Origin: Sphaerodactylus townsendi
Lineage: Eukaryota
Assembly (NCBI RefSeq): GCF_021028975.2
Contig: NC_059428.1
Location: 101,370,001 to 101,434,000, forward strand
Length of the DNA stretch: 64,000 nt
Reading direction: 5' to 3'
Translations under genes and position numbers: made by a program
Part shown: one piece after another, positions 7,253-64,000 of the stretch
Position numbering within the stretch: the first letter of the stretch is position 1
Layout: every line of letters begins with the position of its first letter
The notes under the pieces: model-generated
The model's database searches: none
Seen by the model: the letters and a program-made list of their open reading frames with translations, nothing else
Told to the model about the DNA's origin: nothing

Positions 7253-7547
7253 GAGAGCCAGTGTGGTGTAGTGGTTAAGAGCAGGTGGATTCTAATCTGA
7301 AGAACTGGGTTTGATTTCCCACTCCTCCACCCGAGTGGCAGAGGCTTATCTGGTGAACCAGATGTGTTCCCGCACTCCTACATTCCTCCTGGGTGACCTT
7401 GGGCTAGTCATAGTTCTTCAGAACTCTCTCAGCCCCACCTACCTCACAAGGTGTCTGTTGTGGGGAAAGGAAGGGAAAGGAGCTTGTAAGCCACCTTGAG
7501 TCTCCTTATATGAGGTGGGGTATAAATCCAAACACCACTTCTTCTTC
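7253..7547 (+). mobile_element. Squam3-type SINE, full length
   Basis: GAGAGCCAGTGTGGTGTAGTGGTTAAGAGC head, GGGTGACCTTGGGCTAGTCA core, TATAAATCCAAAC..CTTCTTCTTC tail. Confidence 0.85.
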
Positions 7548-25758: not shown

Positions 25759-25899
25759 GGCTCATTCTGCACATGCAGAATAATGCACTTTCAAACTGCG
25801 TTCAGTGCTCTTTGAAGCTGTGCGGAATAGCAAAATCCACTTGCAAACAGTTGTGAAAGTGGTTTGAAAACGCATTATTTTGCATGTGTGGAAGGGGCC
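25759..25899. mobile_element. PIF/Harbinger-like MITE, TSD TAA
   Basis: Imperfect TIR GGCTCATTCTGCACATGCAGAATAATGC / GCATTATTTTGCATGTGTGGAAGGGGCC; TAA on both sides; second copy at 57291-57429. Confidence 0.8.
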
Positions 25900-26373
25900 T
25901 AAGTAAGTCCACTGACTAGATTCTGAGTAAATCTGCTGAGGATTTCTCTCTGGTTCTCTCGTCTTCAGCTTTCCACTGACACACAGTAAACAGTTAAGGT
26001 AAAAATGGCCCTAACAACAGTTTTAAGTTCTCAATCTTACATTGTGGATACAAGTATATAAAAACTGAATTATTTTCTTAATGGAATTCTATGGAAGTCA
26101 GATTCATACATTACCAGCACAGTGTGAAAACCCTTGTCAAGCATAATAAGGTACATCCCTGCCTTCCCTCCCTCCCACCCTGTCCCACTGCTACTGAATC
26201 CTTTTTGGAGCCTATCTGTGTGTAGTGTGCTAGCATTCCAATCCTGCTGATGTTAAACAGTAAGCAAGAACTGAAAGATAACAGAAGAAATAACAACCCA
26301 CTAATCTGAATTTTTAACCTCTAAAATCTAACAAATAAGTCAAACAGGGAAGAAAAGAAATACATGAACAGAC

Positions 26374-33224: not shown

Positions 33225-33521
33225 TGGAGGGAGAGGGGAAGGGTGGCATGCAAGGGAAGGGAGTGAGGGGTGGCATGCAAGGGAGAGGAGGAAAGGGGAG
33301 GGGGCCCAGCATCTGGACATGGCCCACCCACCCTAGCGGAGGGAGGGAGAGGGGAGGGAAGGGTGGCATGCAAGGGAAGGGAGGGAGTGAGGGGTGGCAT
33401 GTAAGGGAAAGGGAAGAAAGGGCAGGGCCCCCAGCATCTGGACATGGCTCACCCACCCTAGTGAAGGGAGGGAGAGGGAGGGGTGGCATGCAAGGGAAGG
33501 GGAGGGAGTGGTGGCATGCAA
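33225..33521. repeat. G-rich minisatellite (unit ~GGGTGGCATGCAAGGGAAGGGAG) with higher-order duplication
   Basis: Six GTGGCATG units; spacer CCCAGCATCTGGACATGGC..ACCCACCCTAG occurs twice. Confidence 0.85.
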
Positions 33522-52817: not shown

Positions 52818-52963
52818 CTTAGGTTTTTACATGGACAATGGGCTATGCATCTAAACATACAAACACGTGGTCCACAAAAGCAGCTTACCCCTTAGGTTTT
52901 TACATGGACAATGGGTTATGCATCTAAACACACAAACACGTGGTCCATAAAAGCAGGTTACCC
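52818..52963. repeat. 73-bp tandem duplication in CDC16 intron 1, each unit with E-box CACGTG
   Basis: Units 52818-52890 and 52891-52963 differ at only a few bases. Confidence 0.9.
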
Positions 52964-54544: not shown

Positions 54545-54847
54545 GGGAGCAGCAGTGGCATAGGAGGTTAAGAGCTAGTGTATCTAATCTGGAGGAACCG
54601 GGTTTGATTCCCAGCTCTGCCGCCTGAGCTGTGGAGGCTTATCTGGGGAATTCAGATTAGCCTGTACACTCCCACACACGCCAGCTGGGTGACCCTGGGC
54701 TTGTCACAGCTTTTCAGAGCTCTCTCAGCCCCACCTACCTCACAGGGTGTTTGTTGTGAGGGGGGAAGGGCAAGGAGATTGTAAGCCCCTTTGAGTCTCC
54801 TACAGGAGAGAAAGGGGGGGATATAAATCCAAACTCTTCTTCTTCTT
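54545..54847 (+). mobile_element. Squam3-type SINE, full length, young
   Basis: GGGAGCAGCAGTGGC...ATATAAATCCAAACTCTTCTTCTTCTTC. Confidence 0.88.
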
Positions 54848-57185: not shown

Positions 57186-57606
57186 AAGAAGAGGAAGAGT
57201 TTGGTTTTAATCCCCACTTATCTCAATCGTGAGCAGTTTTAAAATAGCTTATAAACTCCTTCCCGTCTTCTCCCTCCCAACAGACACTTTGGCTCATTTC
57301 GCACATGCAGAATAATGCACTTTCAAACTGCTTTCAGCCCTTTGAAGCTGTGCGGAATAGCAAAATCCACTTGCAAACAGTTGTGAAAGTGGTTTGAAAA
57401 CGCTTTATTTTGCATGTGCGGAAGGGGCCTTTGTGAGGTAGGTCAGGCTGAGAGACTTCTGAGAGACCTGTGGCTAACTAAAGGTCATCCAGCAAGCTTT
57501 ATGTGTAGAAACGAGAATCAAACCTGGTTTACAAATTTAGAGTCTGCCATTCATGTGGAGGAGTGGGGTGTCAAACCCATTCCTCCAGATTAGAGTCCAC
57601 CATTCC
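57186..57606 (-). mobile_element. Squam3-type SINE interrupted by a Harbinger-like MITE
   Basis: SINE sequence CAGACAC|...|TGTGAGGTAGG resumes after the insert. Confidence 0.75.
57291..57429. mobile_element. PIF/Harbinger-like MITE (copy 2), TTT flanks
   Basis: Near-identical to 25759-25899. Confidence 0.8.
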
Positions 57607-58070
57607 TTGTAATTTACAGGTACTGTGAACAGACTACATGTATCTGATGAAGGGAGCTCCGATTGATTCACACAAGCTTATACTGGAATTCTTGGTGGAC
57701 TGAGAATTTAGTGTCAGACAAACTCATTAAGGACACTGAATAGTGGGGGCAGGAAAGCACTTTTGGAGGCCTCTGGTAGCTCCTGGACTTGCTGCTTGTT
57801 TTTTCCATCTGGTCCTGTAAGATGTTGTTAATTGCCGAACCACTTTGACTCCCTGGATGTTTTTACATGCAATCTTTGAACCTGGGGATGGCCTAAGGCA
57901 CAAACAGAAGACTCTTGCCCTGTGGCTCTTAGCTGACATCTCTAGTGTGGCTGTTTGTCTTTGAGATACCTGCTGATTGGGGATGTGTTTGGGAAAGCAG
58001 AAAGGACCAGGGCATGGTGCTGCAATTAATCGGGTATGGGGTGGATAAGATAAGATGGTGGAAAAACAGT

Positions 58071-60380
58071 GGAACGTTCTTGGCTTCCGCACAAACAGAG
58101 CAACCTTTAATATATGTCTCAATGTCCTTGCGCATTGCGCGCCACCAAAATTGACGGCGGGCCAAATGTAGAGTTTTGAGAAAGCCAAAATGTCCAGCTG
58201 AGCGGGCATCATGACAGGCCTCGAGAACCTGCTTACGGAGGGGGGGAGGCACGTACCAACATTCCCCCCGTCGCCAAACACCATTCTCCAAACGCAATTG
58301 GGAGTCACTTTCCTCCGCCGGTGGCTCGTGCAGCCCCGCCTCCTCGAGTTCCCGTAGGAAAGGAGAGACCAGGCTGGGAATGGGCGGAGGAGGAGGGGTG
58401 GACGTCTGAGATCGGGTGACAGCCAGCCCCAATTGGGAGGGGGAGAGAATAGTGCGTGGAATGTCCCGTAAGGCAGCTCCACCCCCCTCCCCGGGGAGGC
58501 GCGAGAGCGCATCAGCCAGTTTATTGGGGTTTCCGGGGAAAAAATGTACCGTGAAAGAGAAACGAGAAAAGAAATCGGCCCAACGAAGTTGCTTCGCGGA
58601 CATCTTGAGGGGGGGTGGAGAGGGCGGCCAAGTTCTTGTGATCCGACCAAACTTGAAAGGGGTGTTTAGCCCCTTCCAGCCAGTGGCGCCAAGTGGAGAG
58701 TGCTACTTTGATGGCCGCAGTCTCTTTATCCCCTACAGTCCAGTTGAGCTCAGCACCGGAGAATTTCTTTGATAAATAAGCACACGGAACCAGCCTACCA
58801 TCTTTATTTTCTGCAACAGGGCTGCCCCAAGCGCTTTGTCCGAGACATCCACGTGAACCACACATGGGCGCTCTGGATCAGGGTGCTCCAGGATAGGTTC
58901 GGTGGTAAAAGCTGATTTTAATAGCTGAAAGGCTGTCTGACATTCTTTAGACCAGGAAAGGGGGGCCCCGGGTTTGGCAGTCAATGGATCTTTACCCTTA
59001 GTGCGTAAGAGGTCTGTGAGTGGGAGAGTCAGTTCAGCGAATTGGGGTATAAAGTCACGATAGAAATTAGCAAAACCCAGAAAAGATTGGAGCTCCTTTC
59101 GGTTGGTAGGGGCAGGCCACTGGAGGACTGCATCAATCTTAGCAGGATCCATCTTGAGGCCCTCGGGCGAGATCCGGTAACCCAAATAGTCAATAGAGGT
59201 TTGGTGGAAACAGCATTTTGAAAGTTTGGCAAAGAGGAGTTGTTGAGCAAGCGTTTCAATACTTCCCGAACCAATGCTTCATGCTCTTCCATGGTTTGTG
59301 AATAAATCAAAACGTCATCTAAGTACACCACTACTCCCTTGTACAATAAATCATGGAGAACTTCGTTGATAAGGGCCATAAAACCTCCGGGGGCCCCACT
59401 TAACCCGAATGGCATTATTAAGTATTCAAACTGTCCAAACTTTGTGTTAAATGCAGTCAAGTGTTCATAGCCTTCAGCAATTCTGACCCTGTAGTAAGCT
59501 TCTCTCAAGTCCAACTTAGTAAAAGATCGCCCTTTGCCCACGCGCCTTAATCTAAAAAAGGTCCTTGATCAAAGGCAAAGGGTATTTATTGGACAGGGAG
59601 ACTGCATTGAGACCTCGGTAATCTGTGCAGAGCCGTAAAGACCCATCTTACTTTTACAAACAATACAGGAGCAGCATGTGTGTGTTTGGTAGCCCGCCGT
59701 ATGAACCCGCGAGCGAGGTTCTTGTCTAAGAAGGCACGAAGTTCCTTCTCCTCATTGGGACTCATACGGTAGATTCTACCCTTGGGCAGTTGCGCCCCTG
59801 GCTGTATTACGATTTTGCAGTCAGTGTCTCTATGGGGTGGCAACTGATCGCATTCTTGCTCCTGAAATACTCTGGCTAGATCTTGGGATGCCGGTGGGAT
59901 GCCGGTAGAATCGGGCGCAATCGCTGATGAAGCCAGGGGTGTGTGTGTCAGGAGAAGTCGAGTTTTCCCCCCCAATTCATGTGTTCCCCGCAGGGAGGGT
60001 CAGTGAATTCCAAGATCCTTTCTTTCCAAAGGAATTTTGGTTCATGTAACAACAACCATGGCATGCCCAGAACTATGGAGTGTTTGGCCACTGGCGCCAG
60101 AATAAAACTAATTTTCTCCCAATGGTCGGTAGCCGGAGGAGAACCGGTTGCGTTTTGAACTGGGCGGATCCTTCGCTCCCGAGAAGACTGCCGTCCATTT
60201 GGGTGAATGGTATGGGCTTAGCCAGGGGACTTGGTCTAGACCCAGTTCCTCCGCCACCTGGGGCCGCATTAAGCAATGGGAGCAGCCAGAATCTACAAAG
60301 GGCTGAAGGCTATAATACGAAAGTATGCTTAAGCGGGGTTGGCCAGAAACGCTTGGATTGTGATGGGGCTGCCTTCACTC
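58071..60380 (-). pseudogene. Gypsy pol (PR-RT-RH-partial IN), multiple frameshifts
   Basis: ORFs 59586-59975, 59029-59541, 58733-59185, 58521-58865 and 57929-58603 tile pol in different frames. Confidence 0.92.
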
Positions 60381-60399
60381 ACCAGCGTCTGGAGTCGAA

Positions 60400-62192
60400 C
60401 CCATGTCCATGGGGGCTGAAGAAAGGCACACAGCTGCTTCCCCACCTCTGGGTCGCCTTCAATAACTGCCTTGAATGCGCCTGTTGGGGGCGGCCCGGAT
60501 TTGCGTGGTGGCTTGGCAGATGGGGATCGCAGCGCAGCAGGAGCGGTTGGCTTCTGTTTTTTCGGGCAGTTGGCGGCTAGATGACCTGGTCCTCATGATA
60601 AAAGATTACAATGAAATCCCAGCCGGCGACGACCTTTCGGAGGTGGTCTCGGTAGAGGCGGCTGGAAGCTTGGCTTGGTGGTCGGCAGTAGTGGTCGTAG
60701 TGGCGGGTTTTGGGCGTGGGCCCCGGCACGGGCGTATTCCAAACGAGGCGCCACTTGGGATCCCAATTCGATCCAATCAGCAATAGTGCGGGGGATCGAA
60801 TTAAAAACACCGTTTCAGCGCCAACTTGCCGTCGACAGCATCCGAGAAGTATTCGCATTTCATGCGCTCAGGCCACTCAGGAGGGAGTCGAGCAGCAGCG
60901 CATACCACGAAATTCACGGGCAAATTCTGCAAGCCAGCGGTTGCCTTGCTGGATAGATTTGATAGATGCGGATAGCTTCATTTTCAGCACCCGGATCTTG
61001 GAAGCGAGCCCTTAAGGCTTGGAGGAATGCGGGCACCGTGCGAGTATCCTCATCTTGCAGGTTCAAAAGAGTCACAAACCAGTGCGGCTGCCGCCCATCC
61101 AGGACTGAGCCGATGTCCCGTATTTTTTAGCTCAGACCGGGTATAAATCGTCATAGTCCTCCATGTGGGCATCGAGTTGCAAGATGAAGTAGGGAAGTTT
61201 GGAAGCGGTCCCATCCCGAAGCGGGCAGGTATTGGAGGCCTGTAGTATCCCCTCTCCACGGCCCTTGCCCGCAAGGGCGGTGGTTGCGCAGGTTGAGGCA
61301 GCGGTTGCGCAGGGGGGGCTGGAATCGGTGGAGGTGGAGGTACCAACGCCGGTTACGCTGGCGTTCTGGTGGGGAGCCCGGTCCTTGGAAGGTGGCAGGA
61401 CCCAGCAGCGTCGCCCCTCTGGCGCCGGCTGTACCAGTGACAGCGTAGACTCCAACTTGGGTTGTCCTGTTCTGCTGCTTCTTCAGTTCCCTCTCCAAGG
61501 CAGCCAGCTCTCTCTCCTTGCGAGTCAATGCATCCCGGTCTCTTTGCAGGTTTTCACGCTCTTGCTGCAGCTGTTCTCGTTCCTCTTCCCATAGCTGCCG
61601 TTCACGGGTCCATGCTTCTTGGGCATCTCGCAGTCGGCTCACTTCCTCATCCCAGCTCTCTTTCGATGGGAGAGGGAATAGATCGGAAGGGAGTGCAGGC
61701 TCTCTCCGGACTCCTCTTCCTCTGAACGCAGGGACGCCGCGTGCCCACCGGTGGCTCCACGGGGCATCTCAGATCCAGCTGCTAATCCGGGATCTGGGGG
61801 CCACGGTGGATTCTTGGGAGCATCACCAAAATACGAGTCCAGGAATCGTTCAATGGACTCCTGCGTTGCCGCATGAAAGGTGGTCAGACCCGTCTCCTCC
61901 GTGACAGGCTGCACCTGAGGTTTGTAATCCACATGGAAACGGGCAGATATCCGATCCACAGGCGCTCGATCCATAGACAGCGCCCCAAGCGACTCATGTA
62001 AGTCCACATGATCGCCTCCTGCGTCCCTCGTGCCAGCGGAGTAAGGGAAGACTTCGTGCTGATCACGAGGGCGGGAAAGAGTCACCAGCGAGACCCGTTC
62101 TCCCGCCGGTTCCTCCAGATCCAGAAGGGAAAGGGCCGGAGCCCTCTTTGGGGGGCTACCGCACCTTCCCCAGAAACATCCAACCTCTCCAT
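60400..62192 (-). pseudogene. Gypsy gag (coiled coil, PEG10/sushi-like capsid, decayed zinc knuckle)
   Basis: Coiled coil in ORF 61151-61642; R.DGTASKLPYFILQLDAHM capsid-like segment; GHLAANCP at ~60563-60586. Confidence 0.8.
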
Positions 62193-62239
62193 GCCGAGGC
62201 ACCAGAGGTCCACTGCACTAGGAATATAGATGAATTAGG

Positions 62240-62250
62240 ATTCCTGCCAC
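62240..62250 (-). promoter_or_regulatory. Self-priming primer-binding site GTGGCAGGAAT
   Basis: 2 nt inside the LTR boundary; exact complement of LTR positions 62353-62343. Confidence 0.85.
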
Positions 62251-62252
62251 AA

Positions 62253-62547
62253 TGTAAGGAATTCCATAGAAGCAGAAATAAAAGGCTTTTTGGGTGTAAA
62301 AGACCGTTTATTAAGACATCTTAGAAAGCTCACGTACACGCAGTGGCAGGAATGGCATTTCCCGCCAGAAGCACAGGTTATAACTCTATCCATCCCATCC
62401 CCCACCCGGCTTCCCATGGGAACGGAGGTCTCATCTCCCTCGCAGAGATAAGGTCTCCGCCGTAGGAGCTGGCCCGTCGCCCGGGCTGTGGAATGTAGTC
62501 AAGGCCAAGCAGCCGACCCGCTCATCAACACCACTGAATCCTTTACA
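62253..62547 (-). repeat. 5' LTR (295 bp)
   Basis: TGTAAAGGATT...AATTCCTTACA inverted ends; TATAA 62382-62378; AATAAA 62312-62307. Confidence 0.9.
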
Positions 62548-63153
62548 GTTGCCAAAGAAATAGGAAGAAACATGGAGAGACTAGAAATTGAGTCAAATCC
62601 TAATAGAATCTAAGGGTTTTAAATGAGTGAGAGCGTGGATTGATGTGAAGTGAAAGTCATCTCAGCAGAGGTTGTTGCATCAGTTTGTTTCATTGGTTGT
62701 AAATTATTTCTTGAAAACTTTCGGCTGAAGAATGTATATAAATAAAATGCTAATTTGTTAAATGTAAGCTGAAATCCCATACTAGTAATTTCCTCAGGAC
62801 CACATAGCTCTTCGAAACTGCTTTAAAGCTAGGACACACTACTTCAGGAGAAAGTATAAACGAGCTTGGAATTAAATTCCTGGTGGCGGTGATATACAGA
62901 TAGCAAAAGAGAGGAATAAATAAACATTATTTCGCGCCTACTATATATATTTATTTGTAAAGAAATAAGAGTGGGCATTGCACTTTTGATTTACTTTCTC
63001 GTTTATATCCCTATGGGAGCAATTGCAGAATTTCCCCGCTTTACATTAGTATAGATTTGTTTTCCTGCACCAGCATAGTAATTGTGAGGAACACATCCTG
63101 AGAATAGCAGACCTCTGATCTTCTGAGTTTTGTACATAACAACTGAGGTTTAC

Positions 63154-63346
63154 CTTTTGATTCCGTGACTTGCAGAATCCACGAGGATACCTTGCAATAC
63201 TGTTCATGTACTCTTCTGCCTTTTGCCACTCCTCATTCCATTTCTGGACTTTATACTGAGACTTACACTTTGAAATCCTTTCCAGAATGGCATGATTCTC
63301 TTTGGTCATTCTCAGTAATTCCTGCTCTCGTTTTCTTCTGTTCAGA
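63154..63346 (-). CDS. CFAP97D2: CFAP97D2 internal exon (SLNRRKREQELLRMTKENHAILERI...IARYPRGFCKSRNQK); upstream exons lie beyond the window
   Basis: CFAP97/KIAA1430-type EN..IL.RI motif; TAG/GTAAAC; position upstream of CDC16 as at human 13q34. Confidence 0.85.
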
Positions 63347-64000
63347 CTAAAGGAGATAATGTATACCAATGCCATAAATATGCAAACAAAATAATTGCAT
63401 TAAATTGTTATTGGAAATCAAGATTATTATAGACACATCGATGTACTAGATGAAAACATTAGTCAAATGGGAGACAAAATGCAAACCTATATGCAAAACT
63501 AAGGAAGACTCAACTATATATTACTATTGTCCCCATATAACCAATACTTTTTGTTTTGCAAATTTAACTACCAAAATTGATTTCCTCCCCCATTGTTTTC
63601 TCACTTGAAAAATCATTTAGATATTTCCAGATCCTGGTAGTCATTTGCGTGTGTACTGTGTCATTTGCAAGTGTACTGAGTACTTGGATTTATATGCAGA
63701 GCTTAAGCAGGAAGGACCCACAATCTTGATACACATATTTTCAAACCCAGATGCCTGTGTCAATAAAGATACACTGTCATTTTTCAATGCTTTCTCAACA
63801 TTAATATCTCTTTCTATCCTGTTATCTGATTCAGTGATCTAACAGATTTTGAAATAAAAAATGATCAGGGATCATTTAGGCTAAATGTTTGTAAGACAGG
63901 CACTATAATGATTTAAATTTTTTTGTGTTTTTTTTTTTTACATTGAGAGATAAGTTGTAAAAGGAAGGGGGTGAGACGGCAGTCTGTGCTAGAGAGTGAC

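What the first reader, a model, noticed from the sequence alone, without database searches (positions are those of the whole stretch)
62240..62382. Gypsy element with a complete tRNA-free self-priming signature
Seen on the element's sense (minus) strand: TATAA (62382-62378) lies 29 nt upstream of an A at 62353 inside a perfect initiator (CCATTCC = YYANWYY). The 11 nt from that A, ATTCCTGCCAC, are the exact reverse complement of GTGGCAGGAAT, which sits 2 nt past the LTR end where a tRNA PBS would be. Pairing stops at exactly 11 bp. Established: fission-yeast Tf1 primes reverse transcription with the first 11 nt of its own RNA, and vertebrate sushi-type elements were proposed to do likewise. Inference: this is a young squamate family using self-primed reverse transcription.
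Basis: partly seen in the sequence, partly recalled or inferred. Interest (0 to 1): 0.8.

Follow-up and report, generated by a model that had tools for sequence, protein, structure and literature searches.

The report
Dead Gypsy copy with self-primer
This is the front end of a broken, tail-less copy of a very abundant Gypsy-type jumping gene whose RNA appears built to fold back and prime its own reverse transcription instead of borrowing a tRNA, a trick already known from fission-yeast Tf1 and proposed for its vertebrate relatives.

Summary
On the minus strand TATAA (62382-62378) lies 29 nt before an A (62353) in CCATTCC. The 11 nt from that A are the exact reverse complement of 62250-62240, which starts 2 nt after the LTR end (62253). 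Pairing stops at 11 bp.

Chance is unlikely: 11 of 20,000 LTR shuffles do as well. Five related chromodomain Gypsy elements fetched from a rattlesnake, two geckos and a frog show the same layout. Each has a TATA-like box at -29 to -33, its own 10-12 nt primer, and a matching site 1-2 nt after the LTR. Across the five squamate elements all 55 pairs are Watson-Crick, and 9 of 11 positions change by compensatory pairs.

This is Tf1/sushi-type self-priming, a known mechanism already proposed for vertebrates, so it is a new member of a known kind.

"Complete" and "young" do not fit this copy. It has no 3' LTR, stops inside integrase near 58076, and its gag-pol frame is broken many times. The family itself is hugely multicopy in public runs.

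The transcription start could not be tested because no RNA run was listed. No host tRNA set was available.

The scan's first readers noted the same signature six more times elsewhere in this genome.

The parts
62253..62530 (-). 5' LTR, 278 nt, TGT...ACA termini
   Evidence: The sequence reads TGTTGATG... to ...CCTTACA. A contig joint falls exactly at 62253, and family depth falls off in the 62468-62648 bin. The LTR terminus and following spacer...ACATT, are conserved with gecko relatives. The start at 62530 is inferred, since there is no 3' LTR to compare.
62378..62382 (-). TATAA box, 29 nt before the proposed start
   Evidence: Relatives have TATA-like boxes at -29 to -33 from their own primer start.
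62343..62353 (-). Proposed first 11 nt of the transcript, the self-primer ATTCCTGCCAC. The A at 62353 lies in CCATTCC, preceded by C.
   Evidence: All five squamate elements start the complement with A preceded by C. The transcription start itself is not mapped.
62307..62312 (-). AATAAA poly(A) signal inside R (+42 to +47)
   Evidence: AAUAAA or AGUAAA sits in the same interval in relatives.
62251..62252 (-). TT spacer between LTR end and PBS
   Evidence: The same 1-2 nt spacer is present in relatives.
62240..62250 (-). Primer binding site GTGGCAGGAAT, exact complement of 62353-62343
   Evidence: The RNA from 62353 to 62240 folds with the 11-bp terminal duplex in the minimum-energy structure, -37 kcal/mol, z about -6.
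60400..62192 (-). gag region in several frames: ATG at 62192-62190, coiled-coil stretch, capsid-like stretch 61215-60959, zinc-knuckle remnant near 60590
   Evidence: There is weak tblastn similarity to the gag of the rattlesnake relative. No Pfam gag domain reaches threshold.
60053..60332 (-). Aspartic protease remnant
   Evidence: Pfam Asp_protease_2, E 0.002, below cut-off. tblastn to the protease region of L001.
58970..59900 (-). Reverse transcriptase, split by frame changes
   Evidence: RVT_1, E 4e-19. tblastn to the L001 RT, 56-61% identity in the best pieces.
58524..58877 (-). RNase H
   Evidence: RT_RNaseH, E 4e-18. RT_RNaseH_2 begins already in 58733-59185.
58076..58252 (-). Integrase zinc-binding domain, the last recognisable part of the element
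   Evidence: Integrase_H2C2, E 9e-23. There is no integrase core, SH3, chromodomain, polypurine tract or 3' LTR after it. Family depth collapses in 57762-57942, and a unique contig spans 57572-58099.

Best explanation
The stretch is the R-U5-PBS part of the 5' LTR and leader of a dead, 3'-truncated copy of an abundant chromovirus-type Ty3/gypsy family. The family most likely initiates reverse transcription as Tf1 does. Pol II starts at the A at 62353, about 30 nt after the TATA box. The RNA folds back so that its first 11 nt pair with the site 2 nt after U5. The element's RNase H cuts after nt 11, and the 11-mer primes minus-strand synthesis through U5 and R. Because the primer is copied into the new PBS in each cycle, primer and PBS stay exactly complementary within a family while drifting between families. 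Shown here: the sequence layout, its improbability by chance, the predicted fold, and covariation across related elements. Inferred: the transcription start, the cleavage and the priming itself.
For: The 11-bp complement is exact and sits at the canonical PBS position. Only 11 of 20,000 LTR shuffles reach 11 nt. The 114-nt RNA from 62353 to 62240 folds at -37 kcal/mol, z -5.4 to -6.1, with the 11-bp duplex closing the structure and an inner stem beside it. Related full-length elements carry their own primer/PBS pairs of 10 to 12 nt, offset 1-2 from the LTR end. These are Crotalus L001, Eublepharis L004 and L005, Sphaerodactylus L006 and the frog Dendropsophus L009. Their shuffle frequencies are 2 to 56 per 20,000. 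Across the five squamate elements 55 of 55 positions are Watson-Crick and 9 of 11 positions show different pair types. Cross-pairing one element's primer with another's PBS gives only 3-9 of 11. Window versus L005 differ at two primer positions, and both changes are compensated in the PBS. Every squamate primer starts with A preceded by C, with a TATA-like box at -29 to -33. The PBSs of L001, L004 and L005 contain no TGG, and L006 has none at the start of its PBS, so these cannot pair with a tRNA CCA end. A tRNA-type LTR element in L002 shows no such complement and serves as control. The relatives carry SH3_Tf2-1 and, in L001, L005, L007 and L009, also a chromodomain. That is the group for which self-priming is described (PMC6317226, PMC4600332, PMC7175516).
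Against: The transcription start is unmapped, since no RNA run was listed. The window PBS happens to contain TGG at offset 3, and no host tRNA set could be consulted, so a 10-12 nt tRNA match is not formally excluded. One relative, Pituophis L007 with 98% identical LTRs, shows no complement of 8 nt or more. The frog duplex is only 10 bp and is absent from the minimum-energy fold of its 363-nt leader. Conservation of the two 11-mers among copies of this same family could not be read directly, because the variant table is cut to its best-supported rows. None of the rows shown lies between 62200 and 62611.
Confidence: 0.8

Rival explanations
1. The element is tRNA-primed. TGGCAGGAAT..., starting 3 nt after the LTR, pairs with the CCA end of a host tRNA, and the match to the LTR is secondary.
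For: The PBS region contains TGG at offset 3. tRNA-type PBSs exist in squamate LTR elements: the element in L002 has TGGTGCATTGG... right after its LTR, though my reading of that as tRNA-Gly-like rests on memory.
Against: Past about 12 nt the implied tRNA 3' end lacks the conserved T-arm features. In particular the position that should be the invariant C61 would be A (inference from general tRNA knowledge, not a database test). The PBSs of relatives L001, L004 and L005 contain no TGG, and L006 has none at the start of its PBS, yet each matches its own LTR. A paper search for the implied 3' end returned only mitochondrial-DNA papers, none listing such a tRNA 3' end.
Confidence: 0.05
2. The TSS-PBS hairpin is real and conserved but serves another purpose, such as packaging, dimerisation, translational control or RNA stability. 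Priming would then be by some other means.
For: The fold is strong and conserved in position. No biochemical evidence for priming exists here.
Against: The 3' arm always sits exactly where a PBS must be, 1-2 nt after the LTR's CA. No alternative PBS is visible. The arm length of 10-12 nt matches the Tf1 primer of 11 nt (PMC7175516). The relatives belong to the clade described as self-priming (PMC6317226).
Confidence: 0.1
3. The complementarity is a chance inverted repeat in a decayed repeat-rich region.
For: The window holds many 11-nt inverted repeats within 300 nt (128 overlapping hits).
Against: The shuffle frequency for this position is 5.5e-4. The same feature recurs in five of six related elements with different sequences.
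Confidence: 0.02

Closest known systems
Tf1 and Tf2 of Schizosaccharomyces pombe, the founding self-priming Ty3/gypsy elements
   Same: [quoted passage not shown] Here there is also an exact 11-nt pair, a PBS directly after U5, and a predicted closing duplex with an inner stem.
   Different: The host is a vertebrate. LTR and primer sequences are unrelated. The start site and the RNase H cleavage between nt 11 and 12 are demonstrated for Tf1 and only inferred here. This copy lacks the integrase core and chromodomain.
Vertebrate Tf1/sushi group (sushi-ichi of fugu and relatives; Butler et al. 2001, J Mol Evol 52:260, cited in PMC6317226 and PMC4600332)
   Same: These are vertebrate chromoviruses for which self-priming was proposed from LTR/PBS complementarity. 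The fetched relatives carry SH3_Tf2-1, most also a chromodomain, and two have a Retrotrans_gag/DUF4939-type gag.
   Different: I could not read Butler et al., so I do not know whether reptile elements were included. No RT tree with sushi-ichi was built. No paper in the held library links self-priming with lizard elements.
Tj1 of S. japonicus and the plant Tcn1 clade
   Same: Self-priming is predicted from complementarity of an LTR segment to the PBS (PMC4600332, PMC6317226).
   Different: Those are fungal or non-seed-plant hosts. Tj1 was shown to transpose; nothing was assayed here.
Reptile chromoviruses (Kokosar and Kordis 2013, PMC3670739)
   Same: Full-length, apparently active chromoviruses are reported in Anolis, turtles and other reptiles. 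The present family is abundant in public runs.
   Different: The passages of that paper I searched concern lineage distribution and domestication, not priming.
Retroviral tRNA PBS with U5-IR stem
   Same: The spacer after the LTR's CA and the stem next to the PBS duplex look alike.
   Different: The primer there is a host tRNA 3' end of about 18 nt starting TGG. Here it is the element's own 5' end of 11 nt.

Membership tests
Tf1-type self-priming LTR retrotransposons (mechanistic class) | A segment in the 5' LTR is exactly complementary, over about 11 nt, to the site immediately after U5 | tested here: met
   An 11/11 match with a 2-nt offset. 11 of 20,000 shuffles reach this.
Tf1-type self-priming LTR retrotransposons (mechanistic class) | The complementary segment is the very 5' end of the transcript | not testable with these tools
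   No RNA run was listed, and contigs cannot show starts. Indirect support: TATAA at -29 and a C/A initiator, with the same geometry in five relatives.
Tf1-type self-priming LTR retrotransposons (mechanistic class) | The leader RNA folds so that primer and PBS pair | tested here: met
   This is a prediction only. MFE is -37 kcal/mol, z about -6, with the terminal 11-bp duplex present. The duplex also closes the fold in four squamate relatives, but not in the frog.
Tf1-type self-priming LTR retrotransposons (mechanistic class) | No tRNA 3' end fits the PBS | tested here: inconclusive
   No tRNA genes were found in the window or in ten loci, and no host tRNA set was available. Relatives L001, L004 and L005 have no TGG in the PBS, and L006 has none at its start.
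Tf1-type self-priming LTR retrotransposons (mechanistic class) | Primer and PBS covary among related elements | tested here: met
   55 of 55 pairs are Watson-Crick and 9 of 11 positions have 2-4 pair types. Cross-pairing gives 3-9 of 11. This was tested between families in other species, not among copies of this family.
Tf1-type self-priming LTR retrotransposons (mechanistic class) | RNase H cleavage after nt 11 releases the primer | not testable with these tools
   This needs biochemistry.
Chromovirus (Tf1/sushi clade of Ty3/gypsy) | Domain order PR-RT-RH-IN | tested here: met
   as far as the integrase zinc-binding domain.
Chromovirus (Tf1/sushi clade of Ty3/gypsy) | Chromodomain at the integrase C-terminus | tested here: inconclusive
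   The copy ends before that region. The closest full-length relatives (RT 56-66% identical) have SH3_Tf2-1, and L001, L005, L007 and L009 also have Chromo.
Chromovirus (Tf1/sushi clade of Ty3/gypsy) | RT groups with Tf1 and sushi-ichi in a tree | not tested
   No reference sequences of Tf1, sushi-ichi or PEG10 could be obtained through the tools without typing them.
Intact autonomous LTR retrotransposon | Two LTRs with a target-site duplication | tested here: not met
   There is no second LTR copy in the window.
Intact autonomous LTR retrotransposon | Uninterrupted gag-pol | tested here: not met
   Coding pieces lie in all three frames. The longest genuine piece is about 250 aa.

The most novel reading that the evidence does not exclude
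Self-priming chromoviruses may be the dominant, still active LTR retrotransposons of this reptile lineage. Their independence from tRNA primers might let them escape host defences that target tRNA-type primer binding sites with tRNA fragments. That defence is known from mouse, which I recall from memory and did not check here. The fast compensatory turnover of the primer/PBS pair between families would then reflect selection, for example to avoid cross-interference, rather than drift plus copy-correction.
Probability: 0.1. Interest if true: 0.6.

Novelty: new member of a known kind. Interest (0 to 1): 0.3.

Why it matters
It adds a reptile family, plus matching elements in a rattlesnake, two geckos and a tree frog, to the set of vertebrate Gypsy elements that appear to prime reverse transcription with their own RNA. 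It also gives a clean comparative demonstration of primer/PBS covariation. In practice, LTR annotation pipelines that require a tRNA-type PBS will miss or misclassify such families. Because the family is so abundant, it could provide native material for studying self-priming in a vertebrate. The mechanism itself is not new.

Tried and rejected
Searches for a 3' LTR, or any other copy of the element, in the window found nothing.

The gag N-terminal piece found no protein relatives.

The sequencing-run search listed no RNA run, so the start site could not be examined. Laid contigs showed abundance and boundaries.

ARAGORN found no tRNA gene in the window or in ten loci.

A paper search for the tRNA 3' end implied by the PBS returned only mitochondrial-DNA papers, none listing such a tRNA 3' end.

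Rfam gave nothing at E up to 1 over 61900-62650.

The founding Tf1 papers are not held.

Several loci gave no usable element. The P0001 element in L002, the elements in L003, L008 (fish) and L010 have no definable 5' LTR. L003 yielded only a 233-nt LTR-like unit with 15-nt terminal inverted repeats.

L007 (Pituophis) has clear LTRs but no primer/PBS complement.

LTRs of the different families do not align except at the terminus, so no structure-aware alignment or covariance model was attempted.

The large representative protein search was not used, because Pfam and the word searches sufficed. No RT tree with Tf1 or sushi references was built.

Full report
**The observation**

All coordinates below are on the minus strand.
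- TATAA lies at 62382-62378.
- CCATTCC has its A at 62353.
- ATTCCTGCCAC lies at 62353-62343.
- AATAAA lies at 62312-62307.
- The LTR ends ...CCTTACA at 62253, followed by TT and then GTGGCAGGAAT at 62250-62240.

The two 11-mers are exact reverse complements. The bases on either side cannot pair, so the duplex is exactly 11 bp. Neither 11-mer occurs elsewhere in the window without mismatch.

**Is it more than chance?**

Exact 11-nt inverted repeats within 300 nt are not rare in this window: there are 128 overlapping hits, mostly from a few long palindromic repeats. The right test is therefore positional. I kept the bases after the LTR fixed and shuffled the 278-nt LTR while preserving dinucleotides. 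Only 11 of 20,000 shuffles gave 11 nt or more of complementarity starting within 3 nt of the LTR end.

The RNA from 62353 to 62240 folds at -37 kcal/mol. Its z-score is -6.1 against dinucleotide shuffles and -5.4 against mononucleotide shuffles. The 11-bp duplex closes the structure, with a second stem just inside it.

**What the element is**

Pfam finds RVT_1, RT_RNaseH_2/RT_RNaseH and Integrase_H2C2 in that order on the minus strand. There are also weak protease and zinc-knuckle remnants. This is the Ty3/gypsy domain order.

The copy is not intact.
- No second LTR exists in the window.
- Homology to related polyproteins stops at the integrase zinc-binding domain, near 58076. There is no integrase core, SH3, chromodomain or polypurine tract.
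- The coding region lies in many pieces in all three frames.

The 5' end of the LTR at 62530 (TGTTGATG...) is inferred from the TG..CA rule and from the fall in family depth.

**The family**

No RNA run was listed for the stretch. I laid Logan contigs of four runs from four coded organisms on 57400-62800.
- In run X1, 70,657 contig pieces lay on the stretch, of which 14,914 were 99% or more alike. Some of these belong to an unrelated repeat at 57400-57760.
- Summed depth is about one to two million over most of the element body.
- Depth collapses to about a hundred in 57762-57942. A unique contig spans 57572-58099 without a difference, which fixes the truncation point.
- One contig joint falls exactly at 62253, the LTR end.
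- At many positions nearly all family contigs read another letter or differ in length by one base from the window copy.

This is therefore a decayed member of an abundant, probably recently active family.

None of the 40 best-supported variant rows lies between 62200 and 62611, although that interval has the highest depth. This suggests the window's R-U5-PBS carries the family's usual letters. The table is truncated, however, so this is weak evidence.

**Relatives from other genomes**

The gag N-terminal piece found nothing. The integrase piece found snake proteins at about 38% identity. The RT-RNase H piece found gecko, snake, fish and frog proteins at 45-65%. I fetched the DNA around ten of these proteins and defined LTR pairs by self-comparison.

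Full-length or LTR-bounded relatives are:
- L001, Crotalus adamanteus
- L004 and L005, Eublepharis macularius
- L006, Sphaerodactylus townsendi
- L007, Pituophis catenifer
- L009, Dendropsophus ebraccatus

Their integrases carry SH3_Tf2-1. In L001, L005, L007 and L009 a chromodomain is also present. L001 and L007 have a Retrotrans_gag/DUF4939-type gag. These elements are chromoviruses, the group that includes Tf1 and sushi.

**The comparative test**

In five of these six elements, the bases 1-2 nt after the 5' LTR are exactly complementary to a site inside the same LTR.

| Element | Primer | Pair length (nt) | Offset from LTR end (nt) |
|---|---|---|---|
| L001 | AGCGCAAACTT(T) | 12 | 1 |
| L004 | ATTCTCAACAA(A) | 12 | 1 |
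| L005 | ATTCCTGTCAA | 11 | 2 |
| L006 | AGTTCCAGCAC | 11 | 2 |
| L009 | GCTGGCTATT | 10 | 1 |

- Shuffle frequencies for these are 2 to 56 per 20,000.
- A tRNA-type LTR element in L002, used as control, has no such match.
- Taking 11 positions in the five squamate elements, all 55 pairs are Watson-Crick, and nine positions carry two to four different pair types.
- A primer paired with another element's PBS matches at only 3-9 of 11 positions.
- The window and L005 differ at primer positions 8 and 11, and both changes are compensated in the PBS.
- Every squamate primer begins with A preceded by C. Each element has a TATA-like box 29-33 nt upstream.
- An AAUAAA or AGUAAA signal lies between primer and LTR end in each squamate relative.
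- In the four squamate relatives, the RNA from primer to PBS folds with the terminal duplex in the minimum-energy structure. In the frog's 363-nt leader it does not.
- The LTRs themselves are too diverged to align, except at the ...ACATT terminus.
- L007 is an exception: it has no complement of 8 nt or more.

**How it most likely works**

The literature states that the first 11 bases of Tf1 RNA pair with the PBS, and that RNase H cuts between bases 11 and 12 to release the primer (PMC7175516). It also states that self-priming has been implicated from fungi to vertebrates (PMC4600332, citing Butler et al. 2001) and is taken as typical of Tf1/sushi chromoviruses (PMC6317226).

The layout here fits that scheme point by point. 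From the standard reverse-transcription scheme, I infer that the primer is copied into the plus-strand PBS in each cycle. That would keep the pair exact within a family while the pair drifts between families, which is the pattern seen. The start site, the cleavage and the priming are all inferred, not shown.

**Rivals**

- tRNA priming cannot be excluded formally. The window PBS contains TGG at offset 3, and no host tRNA set was available. However, the PBSs of L001, L004 and L005 contain no TGG, L006 has none at its start, and the implied tRNA end lacks conserved T-arm features beyond about 12 nt.
- A different role for the hairpin is possible. It would not explain why the 3' arm always sits at the PBS position.
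- Chance is excluded in practice by the recurrence across relatives.

**Novelty**

The mechanism and its proposed presence in vertebrates are known. Reptile chromoviruses with full-length copies are known too (PMC3670739). The held library has no paper linking self-priming with lizard elements, but I could not read Butler et al. 2001.

The scan's first readers flagged the same signature six more times elsewhere in this genome. One of those notes reports four Gypsy LTRs with covarying primers. I did not see that DNA.

I rate this a new member of a known kind, of modest interest. A functional assay with an intact copy is referred.

Noticed in passing
L002:10714-19394: An 8.7-kb LTR element in Crotalus adamanteus with 99.1% identical 461-nt LTRs. 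Its PBS starts TGGTGCATTGG 7 nt after the LTR. It looks like a tRNA-type (Gly-like, from memory) primer site and served as a negative control for self-priming.
   Followed up: partly
L009:9210-12883: A frog (Dendropsophus ebraccatus) chromovirus derivative with 100% identical 673-nt LTRs and an ATTTC target duplication. It has no gag or protease, but one open 778-aa frame from the end of RT through RNase H, integrase and the chromodomain. It keeps a 10-nt self-primer/PBS pair and TATAAA at -31, and looks like a very young deletion derivative.
   Followed up: partly
L007:6812-12771: A Pituophis catenifer chromovirus with 98% identical LTRs, lying beside pieces of another Gypsy RT. It has AATAAA almost at the LTR end and no detectable primer/PBS complement. 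How it primes is unexplained.
   Followed up: partly
window 62015-62240: Some family contigs in run X1 join 62015 directly to 62237 or 62240. This indicates a subfamily that lacks about 221 nt of leader immediately after the PBS while keeping the PBS itself. Another contig replaces 62155-62252, the PBS included, with 24 other letters.
   Followed up: no
window 57337-57760, 25807-25907, 1166-1400, 54583-54819, 7380-7465: Unrelated interspersed repeats, SINE-like and 85-96% alike between copies. One of them abuts the truncated end of the Gypsy copy and has very high depth in the runs.
   Followed up: no
window 62549-62800: The flank upstream of the LTR is itself a repeat. Several contigs lie on it with about 30 differences, so the element sits in or next to another repeat.
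   Followed up: no
window 33226-33508 and 52818-52963: A G-rich tandem array with a period of about 120-125 nt, and a 73-nt tandem duplication.
   Followed up: no
L003:2624-2856: A 233-nt LTR-like unit in Crotalus with 15-nt perfect terminal inverted repeats (TGTCAGACCCAGCGT...), preceded by a purine-rich tract.
   Followed up: no
window 63160-63375 (minus): An open frame with splice-like borders just upstream of the element suggests that the Gypsy copy lies in or next to a host gene. It was not identified.
   Followed up: no
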